Positions 10,180-24,319 of a stretch of 64,000 nt of DNA are shown here, piece by piece. The DNA comes from Ylistrum balloti (lineage: Eukaryota), in assembly GCF_031769215.1 (NCBI RefSeq), contig NW_026782626.1, forward strand, positions 124,001-188,000. The letters run 5' to 3'. The notes under the pieces were generated by a model that saw only the letters and a list, made by a program, of their open reading frames with translations, was not told the DNA's origin and made no database searches. Both the position numbers and the translations under genes were made by a program. How positions within the stretch are numbered: position 1 is the first letter of the stretch; each line of letters opens with the position of its first letter.

Positions 10180-10536
10180 TCATATTTTTTTCAAGGCTTC
10201 TTCAACAGCTTCGTGACATATTCGATTTCCAGACGAAGCTATTTCTAATAAACAATCTTTGGTGCGCAAAACTGGAAAGTTATGTAGCAGATAAAGACAC
10301 ATTGGAACACTTCCAGACCTACCCGCTTCTCGCCAAATTTGAAATAACGTTTGAAAATCTATTTCTTGGAAACGGTGAGATATATAATTGTGTAGTTCCT
10401 TGAACCATTGTACATCGCCAGAAATCGCAACCAGATGGAAGTTGCTTTTCTTCAACATCCCGAAGTGTTTCGCTGACTTCACCGGTTCAACAAAGAGACA
10501 CTTGTCCTTCTTGTACTGATAGTGTACAACCAGATC
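10180..10536 (-). CDS. Terminal exon: SH2 C-terminal helix (DLVVHYQ) plus two degenerate ankyrin-like repeats
   Basis: Acceptor tttAG|GATCTG, phase 0, joins FKTIL|DLVVHY. FHLVAISGDVQWFKEL and WREAGRSGSVPMCLYLL resemble ankyrin repeats. TGA stop. Confidence 0.8.
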   Translation of the reverse strand, partial: DLVVHYQYKKDKCLFVEPVKSAKHFGMLKKSNFHLVAISGDVQWFKELHNYISHRFQEIDFQTLFQIWREAGRSGSVPMCLYLLHNFPVLRTKDCLLEIASSGNRICHEAVEEALKKI

Positions 10537-11328
10537 CTAAACAGAAAAGATCATATTGAATAGAGTGTACATGTACAAAAAAAAAGAAACATGTGAACCG
10601 CCGTACTTCTAATTCTAAATCGACATAACTTTGGCGAAGTTTGAAATTAAAGCTATGAAAATTCAACTAAATTATATCAAGGACTACGAAATCGTCCTTC
10701 GCAGCGGCTCGTTCCCGCCTAACGTACTTGAAACCGAAAATTGAAACCTATAGTAAGTTGTTTACCTTTAGATATGAAAGTGTATCTATGCTATTTTCCA
10801 AAACGAAAAAAAGACAGTATGATTAAAAAAAGTCGTATGAATGAGATAAACAGAGACAAGAGGGATATTTTCGAACGCTTTACTTTCTTTCCGGTTCCAC
10901 AACTAGGGACTAAGGGAAGCCTATGTATCATGATGAAGAACGACTCATCGATTGCTTTGGAAGATGCAATACCCAAATACATTTTTCGAAATTCAATATG
11001 GCAATCAAAACTACTATCAAGGGATAACCTACATTCGGATTGCGAGTGATTCATCCTCAAAAAGTTAAAATATGTATAGGCATAACAGCTTTATTTTGTT
11101 CCAATTAAATTTGCATAACAAAATAATAAAAGTCTTTCCTTTGTAATCTTGAAAAGTTAGAAGTTCTTAGTGTATTGAAATATTAACATGTCTATCATAA
11201 AAAGCAATTTCTTTTATAATAATACGCCTGTTTTCCTTAAAAAAACGTAAAACGAAGTTTATCTATAAAATTGTAAAAGTCTGTCAAAGACATAGGAAAC
11301 GAATAAAAATTATGATTAAAAAAAATAC

Positions 11329-11431
11329 CAAGATGGTTTTAAAGATTATATTCTCTTCTAAGTAGACGCCGCCTCGGTCGTCCTGCTCCAGTGGTTGATG
11401 TTGAATATCTTTTCCTTCATTGTTATCGTAT
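11329..11431 (-). CDS. SH2 domain middle exon (I-YDNNEGKDIQHQPLEQDDRGGVYLEENIIFKTIL)
   Basis: tttccAG acceptor, GTATTT donor, 103 nt, phase 2 to 0, open. Confidence 0.8.
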
Positions 11432-11559
11432 CTGGAAATGCATCAATGATTTGAAAAGCATTATATTGATAACACCGCCGTGTAAACATCAAAAGATATT
11501 TCGAAAAATCAGAGAGTATAGTCAATATATTGTATGACATCAGAATATCCTTTACTTAC

Positions 11560-11682
11560 ATTACGCTGAAAGCGAACGATCCCTCATTGAATTTACGATC
11601 GCCATTTCGGAAGAAAAATGTGCCATCCGCAAGGTCTTCGAGGAGGCGCTCAGATTGTGGTTGCGATAAATTTCCCACAAAC
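11560..11682 (-). CDS. SH2 domain N-terminal exon (FVGNLSQPQSERLLEDLADGTFFFRNGDRKFNEGSFAFSV)
   Basis: Matches the SH2 betaA-alphaA-betaB-betaC pattern; FFFR stands for the FLVR motif and keeps the phosphotyrosine-binding Arg. ctgccAG acceptor, GTAAGT donor. Confidence 0.88.
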
Positions 11683-12479
11683 CTGGCAGAAAAGATACCG
11701 TTATGAACAAATGTAGGAAACTGTAAAGTAGTACAATGGATCTATTGCGACGTAAATCGTCGATTGTCTTAATTCACTCACTTCCAGGAATATGCCAAGT
11801 AAAATACCAATATCAGTCGGAAAAAATGAGCAAAATGTATACTTCTCCATTGTACTGTATAACAAATGATTTTCGGAAGTTTCACGAATAAAACTTCGCA
11901 ATCTTCAAATATCAGAAAAAATATTTCATTTTTTCTTTATCTAACAATGAAATGAACTTAAGTATAAGTCCACAGCCTATCACTATCATTCGGTGAGATT
12001 TGATGGTGATTTATGCTAATAAAGTATTCTGTGCCATAAAAAAGTGACGATAACGATAGGACAGTAGCCGTGATATTTTGTTTATATCACGGATGATATT
12101 ACTACGATGTGTCACATTATCTAACGGATCACTTTTTTCGCAACCAATGATAAGCGAAAATATGCTTCCTCGCAAAAACCATAAATGATATGTTTGATAA
12201 AGCCGGCCCCCTTATTTAAAAAAAAGAATTACCCGTAATGTTTCGATATCATTTTTAAACAATTCCCTTTAGTAATCTGCAAAACTTGGAAAAGACCACT
12301 AACAAAACAAAAACAAAAAAATAGCATTGGGAAATAGTTATATTGATGTGATAAAAAGGAAAGAGAAAAAGGACAAAAAAGGCAAGATCAATATAATTTC
12401 TCCAATCGTGTGTAGTGAGAAAATAATCAAACATTATTCAGGCCAAGAAGTAAGTACTTGTGAAATTGTTATATCTTAT

Positions 12480-13030
12480 ATATAGCACAACATGAAAATA
12501 ACAAACTCAACAAAACTGGTGCAAAATTCGAACAAGAGATAAATTTAAGCGAAGCTTCCTGCAAAACGTACCAGGAGAATAACACCGGGTGTTCCGAAAG
12601 AGTAAGCATTTTCTGCTTCACTGACGACATCCGCCATGTAAATCTTGGTAATGTCACGTTATCAAATAAGAATAAAGAATACAACAACAAACACGTCCAG
12701 CTTTATATCGCACAAAGAAATAGAATATTTCTCAATGATATCACTTTGACGACCAGAAAACGTCCCCATAAATTCCATCAACCTCAATCTTTTGAACCCT
12801 GTGTACCGATTTTGGGCATCAGTCGACGACCTCTAGCAAGCAAATCGTGATAATGGGAAGAGGCCCTTGAATATCGAATTAACGGCGACATGTAAACACT
12901 ATAGGTTGGGGATGAAAGATGTTACTACCGAGAAATAAAAAATTAACGTAAGGCAAATTAAAATCGTCACGTTTGTCGGAAAATCGTACATTGTGGTTTC
13001 ACTGTAGAAAAAGATCGAGATAAGCGGCTG
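12480..13030 (-). mobile_element. Penelope-like retroelement 3' remnant (RT C-terminus plus tail), probably Naiad-type
   Basis: Frameshifted translation SDKRDDFNLPYVNFLFLGSNI..SPTYSVYMSPLIRYSRASSHYHDLLARGRRL, followed by the common bivalve tail ggcggatgtc..gcagaaaatgcttactctttcggaacacccgg. Confidence 0.6.
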
Positions 13031-22190: not shown

Positions 22191-22348
22191 AAATAAATAA
22201 GGCTACTTTTCATTTCTTTAAAATAAAATCATTCTGTATCCTCATGCGATATGAGGTTGAGAGTATTTGATGCTCGTAATTATTCCTGTTGGTAATGTTC
22301 TTGTTCAACGTGTTCTCATTTGGGAAAGTCATAATTTCTTTACCTTAC

Positions 22349-22696
22349 CTTGTGATTGAAGCTCCTGAATCTTCAACGATGCGTCCTGAATCAGTTCCGC
22401 TGGTCGGACATCAATTTCTTTAACAGCATTATATAATACCTCATACCTTCCTGTGCTAATGACTCCTTTCTTCATCAGATTGTCACAGAGGGTTTGCATA
22501 TCTATAACCTTCTTTCCAAAGAGTGAGACTCTATCAACATGTGGCTCAAGTAAAGTTTTGAGACTTGACCATGTGTTGTCTTGTTAATCTGGTGACAGAT
22601 AACCAGCCAAATCATTGATCATTTTGGAATGAATTTCTTTCACTTGTACTTTCAGTTTTGAAAATTCTTCTCTCTCTTCCACACACTCCTGTGTAT
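22349..22696 (-). pseudogene. Death-fold (DED-like) exon with in-frame TAA at 22584-22586
   Basis: HSKMINDLAGYLSPD*QDNTWSSLKTLL...QTLCDNLMKKGVISTGRYEVLYNAVKEIDVRPAELIQ; acAG acceptor, GTAAGG donor, phase 1 to 1, 348 nt. The DED call is by pattern recognition. Confidence 0.65.
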
Positions 22697-23244
22697 CTGT
22701 AATTGAAAAACTGGGTTAGTATAAACCGTACCTAATGACCGATTCTGATTCAAAAGACTTTTTCCCTGTCACATGAACTTCGATCTGTATTTAGATAAAA
22801 AGGCAGAACAAAATATAGATAAAAAAATAATAAAAACAATATGACGATTGCCATTTTCTGTGCGTTTGCTAGTGGTCATTTAGTTCTACGTTTCAATTCG
22901 TACACATTTACATATGAAAATCACAAAATTTATTGATAAATGTAGTTTGTGCAACTACCTATTTAGATTTTTACATTTCTTACGATTACGTTTAAACTTT
23001 CTCAATTGCCTCGTAAACTTCCACAGTTAGATCCTTAGCATTTCTGACGAGTCATAGCAGGACAAAACATCTGTATAATGCAGTATTTGTCATTGCTTTG
23101 CTCTTCTATATCTAACTGCATTTTATGGCAAAGGTGCTATTCCCTTTTGTGCCGTTTAACAAATGTGAAACGTGGCGATGCATTTTGAATACTCACAAAA
23201 CAAATAAAATTCATATTAGCAGGAACAATCATGAAAGGACTCAC

Positions 23245-23541
23245 CCGGCTTGTTTTTGGATTGTGTATCCGCAACATGAAGATTCACTTCACGACTGCTT
23301 CCTGTTCCGTATTCATTCTCCGCCTTGCACTGATAGCCACCCTCGTCTCTTGCTTTATTTGTGTCCATAATAAGCAAAGAGGGAGTACTGGTTCCAATAT
23401 ATTTCATATTATGGTCTTGTATTTGAACATTCCCCTTGTACCATGAAAGTCTTGTGACAGGATGTCTTGATTCGACTGTGCATTGCAAAGCAACAGTTCC
23501 GCCTTCTATAGAATGAAACTCGGGGGACAATGGTTTTACTT
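23245..23541 (-). CDS. Immunoglobulin domain exon 2
   Basis: LQCTVES...LSWYKG...DEGGYQCKAEN; tttcAG acceptor, GTGAGT donor, phase 1 to 1. Confidence 0.92.
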
Positions 23542-24016
23542 CTGAAACGTTTATTTTGACACAAAAATACGATGTTTAGACAAACGAAGAAAATATTTCA
23601 TGGTAACAGAATACACATGAGAAAACGAAGTTATGACCGATACGTAATTTCGACAACACAAATGGAAAAGGGAAATGTTTACTGGATATCGTTTTCAAAG
23701 ATCATGGAGATTATGACTAGTTGACATGAACATTAATTATCCTCTGCTCCGTCGGCCACATTCGCCCTGTTAATATGGTTAATGCTAGTATTGTCATTCT
23801 CTCCGTAAACAAAGAATGTACATGTAACGTAAAATAGATAAACGGGATAAGTACCCAGAACCCTCGTCATGGGATCTTTTTGTTTGTATTTATTTCTCTC
23901 CCTCCTTTCAGAAGTAACTTTTCATGTTGTATAGACATTGGAAAAGTAGTTAATAAATATTGGCTGAAAAATGTATCTAACCAATATTCACTCCATAAAT
24001 ATAAGATTATGCTTAC

Positions 24017-24319
24017 CAGGAATGTGTTTTTCTTTGTCAATCGAAATATTTAGATGCACTTCACTTTGTCCTGTTCCGTAAATATTCGCTGCCTCACAGT
24101 GATAGCTACCCTCATCATGACCTATTTCAGCGTTCTTAATAGCAAGTGATGGGGTATTACTTCCTCCATACTTTATATCGTCGTGTAGTATTTTAGTACT
24201 TCCTTTGTACCAGGATACGTTTGTTAAAGGGGGGTCCGAATTGACCGTACACTCCAGGGTGACCGTTTCGCCTTCCACAACAGAAACAATGCTGGACGTT
24301 GGTGTTACTGACGGTTTAT
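24017..24319 (-). CDS. Immunoglobulin domain exon 1
   Basis: LECTVNS...VSWYKG...DEGSYHCEAAN; ttttAG acceptor, GTAAGC donor, phase 1 to 1. Paralogous to Ig2. Confidence 0.92.

What the first reader, a model, noticed from the sequence alone, without database searches (positions are those of the whole stretch)
10180..24319. Apparently cytoplasmic Ig-Ig-DED-Ig-SH3-SH2-ankyrin protein: candidate unusual innate-immune adaptor or receptor
Seen: phase-compatible exons on the minus strand give two Ig domains, a death-fold (DED-like) exon, a linker, a third Ig, a split SH3, a three-exon SH2 that keeps the betaB Arg, and ankyrin-like repeats. No TM exon or kinase domain was found. The SH3, most of the SH2 and the DED exon are absent from the ORF track. 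Established: death folds nucleate caspase/NF-kB signalling complexes, SH3-SH2 pairs read phosphotyrosine and proline-rich signals, and SH2-ankyrin occurs in SHARK/HTK16 kinases. Inference: this joins an Ig recognition module to both death-fold and phosphotyrosine signalling in one kinase-less protein. I know of no characterised protein with this architecture, but could not search for one.
Basis: partly seen in the sequence, partly recalled or inferred. Interest (0 to 1): 0.85.

Follow-up and report, generated by a model that had tools for sequence, protein, structure and literature searches.

The report
Scallop Ig, DED-like, SH2 exon array
A scallop locus carries real exons for three immunoglobulin domains, a death-effector-like domain and a phosphotyrosine-binding SH2 domain on one strand and in matching reading phase, which would make a new kind of signalling adaptor if they are one protein. 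That is unproven, and the death-effector exon has a stop codon in this assembly.

Summary
Most of the described exons are real. Three I-set Ig exons pass Pfam thresholds. The three SH2 exons splice into a full SH2 domain (E 3.3e-11) that keeps the betaB Arg. The "DED" exon belongs to a family of small, uncharacterised scallop proteins, and its model is closest to solved DEDs (Z 9.8 to 8.0) rather than PYD, CARD or DD (Z 5.0 to 3.4).

Two claims are weaker. The SH3 stays below threshold and I could not fix its second half. The "ankyrin" tail has no Pfam or fold match.

In one public DNA run of another individual or haplotype this codon is TTA (Leu). The stop is therefore either a segregating null allele or a base error.

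The main claim, one Ig-Ig-DED-Ig-SH3-SH2 protein, could not be tested. No RNA run holds the locus. None of the 11 proteins that match this DED in a 1.8-billion-protein library has Ig or SH2 domains. Phase-1 symmetry and close spacing tie Ig1-Ig2-DED together and Ig3-SH3-like-SH2 together. The 5.2-kb link between the two clusters is inferred. A candidate exon at 21115-20961 would end the frame there.

My estimates: one gene about 0.45, two genes about 0.35. This scan had not noted this locus before.

The parts
24017..24319 (-). Ig1 exon (I-set), 303 nt, phase 1-1. It needs an upstream coding exon, which was not found.
   Evidence: Pfam Ig_3 3.8e-15 and I-set 1.2e-14. Splice sites ttttag|AT and G|gtaagc read. 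There is no ATG in the open frame upstream of the acceptor.
23245..23541 (-). Ig2 exon (I-set), 297 nt, phase 1-1. It is 46% identical to Ig1.
   Evidence: Pfam I-set 6e-12. tblastn of Ig1 against Ig2 gives 46% identity. Donor G|gtgagt.
22349..22696 (-). DED-like exon, 348 nt, phase 1-1. It encodes a complete six-helix death-effector-like domain.
   Evidence: Splice sites. Homologs. AF2 pLDDT 94. DED matches: Foldseek TM 0.72-0.76, VIA Z 9.8-8.0, Atlas caspase-8/FADD/vFLIP.
22584..22586 (-). In-frame TAA stop in the loop between helices 1 and 2 of the DED-like domain. The codon is TTA (Leu) in public run X1.
   Evidence: translation; at 22585 the + strand T reads A at depth 10.2. Some scallop homologs have Leu in the corresponding stretch (SPEL.., NPKL..).
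20952..21115 (-). Candidate extra exon (52 aa, acidic and Ser/Thr-rich). It has a strong phase-1 acceptor and a phase-0 donor at 20961. If unspliced there, it reaches a stop two codons later (TGA 20954-20952). It could end an Ig-Ig-DED protein. It has no support from homologs.
   Evidence: GC is 41% against about 35% in the surrounding intron. No Pfam hit.
16798..17100 (-). Ig3 exon (I-set), 303 nt, phase 1-1.
   Evidence: Pfam Ig_3 1.1e-11 and I-set 7.1e-11. Splice sites.
16270..16397 (-). First half of an SH3-like module (..PLTFRTGETIKVDD..HWWK). Phase-1 acceptor 400 nt after Ig3.
   Evidence: Pfam SH3_1 E 0.032, SH3_9 0.087, SH3_2 0.1, all below threshold. Splice sites.
15220..15358 (-). 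Best candidate for the second half of the SH3-like module plus a linker. It requires the weaker donor at 16277. An alternative exon is 15496-15423.
   Evidence: The model with this exon gives SH3_2 E 0.0049, 17 bits, under the 21.8 cut-off. The alternative exon, and both exons together, give nothing.
11560..11720 (-). SH2 exon 1 (alternative acceptor at 11682). Contains ..GNLSQPQSERLL..GTFFFRNG.. with the betaB Arg.
   Evidence: Pfam SH2 E 8.6e-4 for this exon alone. Spliced SH2. Sequence.
11329..11431 (-). SH2 exon 2 (..KDIQHQPLEQDDRGGVYLEENIIFKTIL).
10180..10536 (-). Last coding exon. It holds the end of the SH2 domain (DLVVHYQYKKDKCLFVEPV), then a helical tail of about 95 aa, then TGA at 10182-10180.
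   Evidence: The tail has no Pfam hit, ANK-like language-model features at 0.95, an AF2 single-sequence model of paired helices at pLDDT 55, and no fold match.

Best explanation
This is a lineage-specific scallop gene built by shuffling phase-1 exons. An array of three related I-set Ig exons has taken up a DED-like exon from a scallop family of small death-effector-like proteins. It continues into a divergent SH3-like stretch, a canonical SH2 domain and a short helical tail, with no kinase.

The inferred product is a cytosolic adaptor:
- The SH2 domain would dock on tyrosine-phosphorylated partners.
- The DED-like domain would recruit or co-polymerise with other DED or DED-like proteins.
- The Ig domains would act as further protein-binding modules.

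The sequenced haplotype carries a nonsense codon in the DED exon, and another individual or haplotype has Leu there. The gene is therefore either polymorphic for a null allele or the assembly has a base error at that position.

Shown: the exons, their domains, their phases, the stop codon and its variant. Inferred: that the two exon clusters are spliced together, the cytosolic location, and every functional step.
For: - All four large module exons are phase 1-1 with strong donors, on one strand, with no stops other than the TAA.
- Ig1-Ig2-DED are 475 and 548 nt apart. I found no in-phase start exon in the Ig2-DED intron, so the DED exon is most simply spliced to Ig2.
- Ig3 is an internal exon with a phase-1 acceptor. 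The nearest strong upstream phase-1 donor is that of the DED exon.
- The only ATG-start candidate in that intron (18519-18258) has no homologs. The 146-aa open frame that contains it (18091-18528) carries a 7-bp indel in run X1, at 18183, downstream of the candidate's donor.
- Ig3 is related to Ig1 and Ig2 (34% identity). Both clusters show the same odd pairing of Ig with an intracellular domain.
- The DED fold and family are supported. SH2 is supported.
- The DED-like module is a single internal exon in a Mizuhopecten homolog as well, as expected for a shuffled module.
- The codon is TTA in run X1, and homology runs across the stop in frame.
Against: - No transcript evidence of any kind. No RNA run holds the locus.
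- The representative search with the DED piece found only proteins of 144-426 aa without Ig or SH2, plus two likely spurious repeat hits. These include RefSeq proteins of two scallops.
- A well-formed candidate exon at 21115-20961 sits between the clusters. It accepts the DED donor but is out of phase with Ig3.
- The start exon is unknown, so a signal peptide cannot be excluded.
- The reference allele has a stop codon.
- SH3 and ANK are not established.
Confidence: 0.45

Rival explanations
1. There are two adjacent same-strand genes. The upstream gene encodes (unknown start)-Ig-Ig-DED-like plus a short tail, ending in the exon at 21115-20952. The downstream gene encodes (unknown start)-Ig3-SH3-like-SH2-helical tail. 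Each would still be an unusual pairing of Ig with an intracellular domain, but no single protein would link a death fold to phosphotyrosine reading.
For: - The candidate exon 21115-20961 has a strong phase-1 acceptor and exon-like GC. It reaches a stop two codons past its donor.
- Scallop DED-like homologs are small proteins made of a DED plus a tail of 35-60 aa.
- No protein in the library combines this DED with SH2.
- The 5.2-kb gap contains repeats, with depth of about 4000x at 17148-17545 and about 90x at 21924-22321.
Against: - No credible start exon for the downstream gene. The only ATG-start candidate (18519-18258) has no homologs, and the open frame containing it carries a 7-bp indel in X1.
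- The candidate terminal exon has no homolog or Pfam support.
- AATAAA motifs occur about once per 800 nt in DNA this AT-rich, so they say little.
- A gap of under 4 kb between genes would be tight for a genome with introns of 3-5 kb.
Confidence: 0.35
2. This is a decaying or never-expressed exon assembly, that is, a pseudogene. The modules are recent duplicates brought together by duplication or shuffling and are no longer under selection. The TAA would be the first visible lesion.
For: - In-frame TAA in the reference.
- No RNA run holds the locus.
- No near-identical protein in a 15-billion-protein collection.
- SNP density in the two exons covered (3 listed in 651 nt) is not clearly lower than in the intron (about 37 in 5300 nt).
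Against: - All other exons are open, with canonical splice sites and conserved core residues: the Ig Cys/Trp/Tyr-x-Cys pattern, the SH2 FLVR-type Arg and the betaD His.
- The stop is absent in another individual or haplotype, and the codon there is Leu, a residue some homologs have near that position.
- The lack of RNA runs reflects the data available, not measured silence.
Confidence: 0.15
3. The Ig exons belong to a secreted or membrane IgSF gene, and the DED-like exon is an unrelated relic lying in one of its introns. It would be skipped in the mature mRNA, and skipping keeps the frame because the exon is phase 1-1.
For: - Removing a phase 1-1 exon leaves Ig2 joined to Ig3 in frame.
- The stop codon would be harmless in that case.
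- The Ig domains keep the Cys pair typical of extracellular Ig, and their best matches include cell-adhesion molecules.
Against: - The protein would still run from Ig3 straight into the SH3-like and SH2 parts with no membrane span, so the topology problem remains.
- The DED exon has strong splice sites on both sides and is intact in X1.
- No signal-peptide exon was found.
Confidence: 0.05

Closest known systems
Scallop DED-like small proteins (e.g. Mizuhopecten yessoensis LOC110451453, XP_021355154.1; Pecten maximus LOC117322499, XP_033733344.1), all 'uncharacterized'
   Same: The DED-like domain is 26-41% identical across the whole exon, including across the stop. In LOC110451453 the domain is also one internal exon ending ..QSKG.
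   Different: These are proteins of 144-426 aa with one or two DED-like domains and short tails, or in one case a long C-terminal part with no Pfam match. None has Ig, SH3 or SH2. Two (P0004, P0009) contain an MG(C/I).. motif suggestive of lipid anchoring; in P0009 it is internal.
Death effector domains of caspase-8, cFLIP, FADD, PEA-15 and viral FLIP MC159
   Same: Same fold. VIA Z is 9.8 (MC159 DED2), 8.8 (PEA-15) and 8.7 (caspase-8 DED2), with rmsd 2.0-2.3 over 71-76 residues. Relatives in the same alignment reach or approach the Pfam DED threshold (P0007 84 bits, P0002 34.8 bits).
   Different: The window's domain scores only 13.4 bits on Pfam DED. The RxDL motif of helix 6 is not kept (VRPAEL here, not conserved in the family). 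It is attached to Ig domains rather than to a caspase or a death domain.
Src-like adaptor proteins (SLAP/SLA) and the SH3-SH2 module of Src-family kinases
   Same: Order SH3-like then SH2, followed by a non-catalytic tail and no kinase. Lck and Src SH2 domains are among the best solved matches (E about 5e-8). The SLAP layout is from my own knowledge.
   Different: The SH3 is not established here. The tail is unrelated as far as tested. SLAP has no Ig or death-fold domain. Orthology was not tested.
Shark / HTK16 / Syk family (SH2-ankyrin-SH2-kinase in invertebrates)
   Same: The best solved SH2 match is the C-terminal SH2 of SYK (E 3.4e-8). The SH2 is followed by a helical stretch with ankyrin-like language-model features.
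   Different: There is one SH2, not two. The window has no kinase motif. No Pfam ANK hit. The reading frame ends 95 aa after the SH2.
Shuffled death-fold architectures of invertebrate immune gene repertoires (e.g. the DED-like NB-ARC-TPR gene noted in this same genome, s1-238028)
   Same: A DED-like module is attached to unrelated signalling modules in a scallop.
   Different: The partners here are Ig and SH2. I did not find this combination in the papers searched.

Membership tests
Death effector domain (PF01335, death-fold superfamily) | Helical death fold that matches DEDs better than DD, CARD or PYD | tested here: met
   AF2 with a 14-sequence alignment gives pLDDT 94 and helices 2-6 in the 78-aa piece after the stop. 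Helix 1 lies before the stop. DED matches reach VIA Z 9.8-8.0, against PYD 5.0, CARD 4.9 and DD 3.4. See also Foldseek and Atlas.
Death effector domain (PF01335, death-fold superfamily) | Score above the Pfam gathering cut-off | tested here: not met
   The window piece scores 13.4 bits, E 0.093, against a cut-off of 35.9. Family members found with it score 84.1 bits (P0007) and 34.8 bits (P0002).
Death effector domain (PF01335, death-fold superfamily) | RxDL motif (charge triad) in helix 6 | tested here: not met
   The sequence reads ..EIDVRPAELIQ... The Arg is not conserved in alignment A1. The motif definition is from my own knowledge.
Death effector domain (PF01335, death-fold superfamily) | Uninterrupted reading frame | tested here: inconclusive
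   TAA at 22586-22584 in the window. TTA in run X1.
Death effector domain (PF01335, death-fold superfamily) | Homotypic DED-DED assembly | not testable with these tools
   Needs binding or filament assays.
SH2 domain (PF00017) | Full-length match above the gathering cut-off | tested here: met
   The spliced three-exon domain scores E 3.3e-11, 43.6 bits against a cut-off of 21, covering profile 2-77 of 77. 101 solved SH2 sequences match at E 0.01 or better.
SH2 domain (PF00017) | Phosphotyrosine-binding residues (betaB5 Arg of FLVR, betaD4 His, alphaA2 Arg) | tested here: inconclusive
   The betaB5 Arg (FFFR) and a His in ..DIQHQ.. are present. The alphaA2 position is Gln (NLSQ, against ISR in SYK; alignment). 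Binding itself was not testable.
SH3 domain (PF00018/PF07653) | Match above the gathering cut-off, with both halves of the barrel | tested here: not met
   The best model scores SH3_2 17.0 bits against 21.8. The other splice models score nothing. No solved SH3 matches. The first half has an SH3-like ..LTFRTGETIKV..HWW pattern.
Ankyrin repeat (PF00023/PF12796) | Recognisable 33-residue repeats by profile or fold | tested here: not met
   No Pfam family at E up to 1. The low-confidence model shows paired helices, but Foldseek finds no ANK. The only support is language-model features at 0.95 to ANK clusters.
I-set immunoglobulin domain (PF07679) | Match above the gathering cut-off, with the Cys..Trp..Tyr-x-Cys core | tested here: met
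   Three exons score 54.6, 45.9 and 42.5 bits against a cut-off of 23.7. Core residues are visible.
Shark/HTK16/Syk kinases | Tandem SH2 domains and a tyrosine kinase domain | tested here: not met
   There is one SH2. No HRD, DFG or G-loop kinase motif occurs on the gene's strand in the window; the two DFGx strings on the + strand have no kinase context. The frame ends at 10180.
   No RNA run holds the locus. The one search without a length limit found no such protein. The length-limited searches were blank.

The most novel reading that the evidence does not exclude
A kinase-less cytosolic adaptor that physically couples phosphotyrosine recognition (SH2) to death-effector-domain assembly. Three intracellular Ig domains would serve as extra binding modules. 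The gene would segregate in scallop populations as functional and null alleles. This would be a direct wire from tyrosine-kinase receptors to caspase-8-type or NF-kB-type DED platforms, which to my knowledge has not been described in any animal.
Probability: 0.3. Interest if true: 0.75.

Novelty: new variant of a known kind. Interest (0 to 1): 0.5.

Why it matters
Death-fold platforms and phosphotyrosine signalling normally meet only through several intermediate proteins. One protein with a DED and an SH2 would show that bivalves have wired them directly. It would also give a simple handle (SH2 ligand, DED partner) for studying how invertebrate immune receptors trigger caspase or NF-kB responses.

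Even if there are two genes, Ig domains fused to a DED-like domain, and Ig fused to SH2, are unusual. They also point to an uncharacterised scallop DED-like family. The stop/Leu polymorphism adds a possible case of a segregating null allele in a bivalve signalling gene.

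Tried and rejected
- **Finding the full-length homolog.**
  - The Ig3 exon, the last exon and the large intronic ORF gave no hits in the word-indexed protein search, which only sees proteins 0.55-1.75 times the query length.
  - I spent the single search without a length limit on the DED piece. 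The SH2 half could therefore not be searched against long proteins.
- **RNA evidence.** No RNA run is listed. The only run, X1, is DNA contigs. Its 'joints' have short sides at repeats and are not splice junctions.
- **Other scallop loci.** The Mizuhopecten and Pecten loci of two DED-like homologs have no Ig or SH2 exons within 10 kb. Two other look-ups were not on record.
- **SH3 region as a degenerate fourth Ig.** There was a weak hemolin hit at E 0.028. A profile built from the gene's own three Ig exons scores it no better than shuffled sequences.
- **TM exon between Ig2 and DED.** The hydrophobic open frame at 22753-22875 lies in the pyrimidine tract before the DED acceptor and lacks usable phase-1 splice sites.
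- **Codon-usage score for exons.** Trained on the window's own exons, it did not separate known exons from random open frames well enough to use.
- **Start-exon scan upstream of Ig1.** It gave only weak candidates, among them MGTLLCGGSK at 26688-26658. No Pfam domain occurs in upstream open frames.
- **Language-model search for the SH3 exon.** The service was busy four times.

Full report
**What is in the sequence**

The window is AT-rich animal DNA (33-40% GC). Earlier notes of this scan call the genome a scallop. That fits, because nearly all protein homologs found here come from Mizuhopecten yessoensis and Pecten maximus.

I read the following exons on the minus strand between 24319 and 10180. 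All have canonical AG and GT sites.

| Exon | Coordinates | Note |
|---|---|---|
| Ig1 | 24319-24017 | phase 1-1 |
| Ig2 | 23541-23245 | phase 1-1 |
| DED-like | 22696-22349 | phase 1-1, in-frame TAA |
| Ig3 | 17100-16798 | phase 1-1 |
| SH3-like, first half | 16397-16270 | |
| SH2 exon 1 | 11720 or 11682 to 11560 | |
| SH2 exon 2 | 11431-11329 | |
| Last exon | 10536-10180 | ends in TGA |

The four large module exons are all phase 1-1 and end in strong donors. No second copy of any module exists elsewhere in the window.

**Domain checks**

- **Ig.** The three Ig exons pass the Pfam I-set and Ig_3 thresholds. Ig1 and Ig2 are 46% identical, and Ig3 is 34% identical to Ig1. Their best solved relatives are generic I-set domains from titin, Robo, contactin, DCC and others. 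This does not tell intracellular from extracellular use.
- **SH2.** Spliced from three exons, the SH2 is a full-length Pfam match (E 3.3e-11, 43.6 bits against a cut-off of 21). It keeps the FLVR-type Arg (FFFR) and the betaD His. It has Gln at the alphaA2 Arg position. The closest solved SH2 domains are SYK C-SH2, Lck, p85 and Src (E about 4e-8).
- **SH3.** The first SH3 exon looks SH3-like (..PLTFRTGETIKV..HWWK) but scores only E 0.03.
  - I tried three ways of adding a second half.
  - The best uses the weaker donor at 16277 and exon 15358-15220. It gives SH3_2 at E 0.0049, 17 bits, below the 21.8 cut-off.
  - The other two give nothing.
  - A weak hemolin (Ig) hit for that model is not backed by a profile of the gene's own Ig exons.
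  - SH3 is therefore probable at best.
- **Tail.** The 95-aa tail after the SH2 has no Pfam hit. Its single-sequence model is low-confidence paired helices with no fold match. The only support for ankyrin is a language-model resemblance.
- **Kinase.** No kinase motif occurs on the gene's strand in the window; two DFGx strings on the other strand have no kinase context.

**The DED-like exon**

On its own, the 78-aa piece after the stop scores only E 0.09 on Pfam DED. A search of 1.84 billion representative proteins with it found 11 proteins.

- Eight are 'uncharacterized' scallop proteins and one is from a chiton. They are 144-426 aa long.
- Two of them reach or approach the Pfam DED threshold in their own right: P0007 at 84 bits and P0002 at 34.8 bits.
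- The two other hits are short matches to repetitive proteins and look spurious.

With an alignment of these homologs (A1), AlphaFold gives a confident model (pLDDT 94) of five helices. Its structural neighbours are almost only DEDs.

- VIA Z is 9.8 for MC159 DED2, 8.8 for PEA-15 and 8.7 for caspase-8 DED2.
- Pyrin, CARD and death domains score 5.0, 4.9 and 3.4.
- The Atlas shape search returns caspase-8, FADD and v-FLIP clusters.

The RxDL motif is not kept. I therefore call it DED-like: the DED fold and a DED-related family, but below the Pfam threshold.

In Mizuhopecten LOC110451453 the same module is one internal exon (residues 7-112). It follows a 6-residue first exon and is followed by short tail exons. 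So it is a portable exon.

**The stop codon**

Homology to the scallop proteins continues in the same frame on both sides of it, so it is a point change in a once-continuous domain.

The only public run that holds this DNA is X1. It consists of DNA contigs at about 10x word depth and differs from the window at about 0.7% of sites, so it is another individual or haplotype. X1 reads A for T at + strand position 22585. That turns the codon into TTA, Leu. Several homologs have Leu in that stretch.

The stop is therefore either a segregating null allele or a base error in the assembly. On the TAA allele, translation would end after Ig1, Ig2 and helix 1. Alternatively the exon could be skipped, which keeps the frame.

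**One protein or not**

Points in favour of one gene:
- Same strand throughout.
- Ig1, Ig2, DED and Ig3 are all phase 1-1.
- I found no in-phase start exon in the 548-nt intron before the DED exon.
- Ig3 is an internal exon that needs an upstream phase-1 donor, and the DED donor is the nearest strong one.
- The only ATG-start candidate in the 5.2-kb gap has no homologs. The open frame that contains it carries a 7-bp indel in X1.
- Both clusters show the same odd pairing of Ig with an intracellular module.

Points against:
- No RNA run holds the locus.
- No protein in the library combines this DED with Ig or SH2, although RefSeq proteins of two scallops are in it.
- A well-formed candidate exon lies at 21115-20961. 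It has a strong phase-1 acceptor, 41% GC and 52 codons.
  - It would take the DED donor.
  - It would then either stop two codons past its own donor or shift Ig3 out of frame.
  - That would give an Ig-Ig-DED-short-tail protein, like the small scallop DED-like proteins in layout, and would leave Ig3-SH2 as a second gene.
  - Both outcomes could also coexist through alternative splicing.

My estimates are one gene 0.45, two genes 0.35, unexpressed or decaying locus 0.15 and DED exon as a skipped relic 0.05.

**Start of the protein and location**

Ig1 has no ATG in its open frame and begins in phase 1, so at least one upstream coding exon exists.

- I found no convincing signal-peptide exon up to 42 kb and only weak start candidates up to 29.5 kb, one of which reads MGTLLCGGSK.
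- Upstream open frames have no Pfam domain.
- Further upstream lie LTR-retrotransposon integrase pieces on the same strand, reverse-transcriptase-like frames on the other strand, and a haem peroxidase gene on the + strand.

'Cytoplasmic' is thus inferred only from the DED and SH2 modules and from the lack of a membrane span between them and the Ig exons.

**How it would work (inferred)**

If it is one protein, the SH2 would bind a tyrosine-phosphorylated receptor tail or scaffold. The DED-like domain would bring in other DED or DED-like proteins. Candidates are the scallop small DED-like paralogs, some of which contain an MG(C/I).. motif suggestive of lipid anchoring, or caspase-8 and FADD. 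The result would convert a phosphotyrosine signal into a death-fold assembly. None of this is shown.

**Comparison and novelty**

- The DED-like domain belongs to an unstudied scallop family.
- The SH3-like-SH2-tail layout works like Src-like adaptor proteins, a comparison from my own knowledge.
- It is not a Shark or Syk kinase, because it has one SH2 and no kinase.
- The papers I searched on bivalve and lophotrochozoan apoptosis and immune repertoires, and on SH2 evolution, do not mention an Ig-DED-SH2 protein.
- Shuffled death-fold architectures are, however, common in invertebrate immune repertoires. Another one, DED-like NB-ARC-TPR, was already noted in this genome.

I rate this a new variant of a known kind, of moderate interest until a transcript shows the two halves joined.

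Noticed in passing
P0004 (XP_021362286.1, Mizuhopecten) and P0009 (XP_033749407.1, Pecten maximus): Two DED-like paralogs carry MGCTSS.. or ..MGINCS.. just before the DED-like domain; in P0009 the motif is internal in the gene model. This looks like an N-myristoylation/palmitoylation motif of the Src SH4 type and suggests membrane-anchored DED-like proteins in scallops.
   Followed up: no
L001:10884-11201 and L001:16255-16572 (Mizuhopecten NEDP02003018.1): LOC110451453 contains two copies of the DED-like exon, 76% identical at protein level and 5 kb apart. This is either a tandem exon duplication or alternative exons.
   Followed up: partly
window 17148-17545 and 21924-22321: Two intronic stretches are high-copy repeats in run X1, with summed contig depth of about 4000-4500x and about 90x against about 10x elsewhere.
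   Followed up: no
window 18558-19226 (+): These open frames read like the C-terminal part of an LTR-retrotransposon integrase (my reading; no Pfam hit). They lie inside the 5.2-kb gap between the DED and Ig3 exons and are single-copy in X1.
   Followed up: partly
window 29893-31325 (-): LTR-retrotransposon integrase remnant (Integrase_H2C2, E 1e-13) on the gene's strand, upstream of Ig1.
   Followed up: partly
window 43330-51420 (+): Animal haem peroxidase gene (An_peroxidase, E 2.8e-66 for exon 50094-50885). It would be transcribed divergently from the Ig/DED/SH2 locus. Another reader has already noted it.
   Followed up: no
window 17096 and 20974: X1 carries a Leu-to-Phe change at the second residue of the Ig3 exon (17096) and an Asp-to-Gly change in the candidate exon 21115-20961 (20974). 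X1 also has a 7-bp deletion at 18183 and a 9-bp insertion at 20108 in the intron.
   Followed up: partly
P0015 (OWF42725.1, Mizuhopecten, 1990 aa): A long 'ankyrin repeat subunit B' gene model sits in the same 90% cluster as the tandem DED-like protein P0001. It may be a fused gene model or a real DED-like plus ankyrin protein.
   Followed up: no
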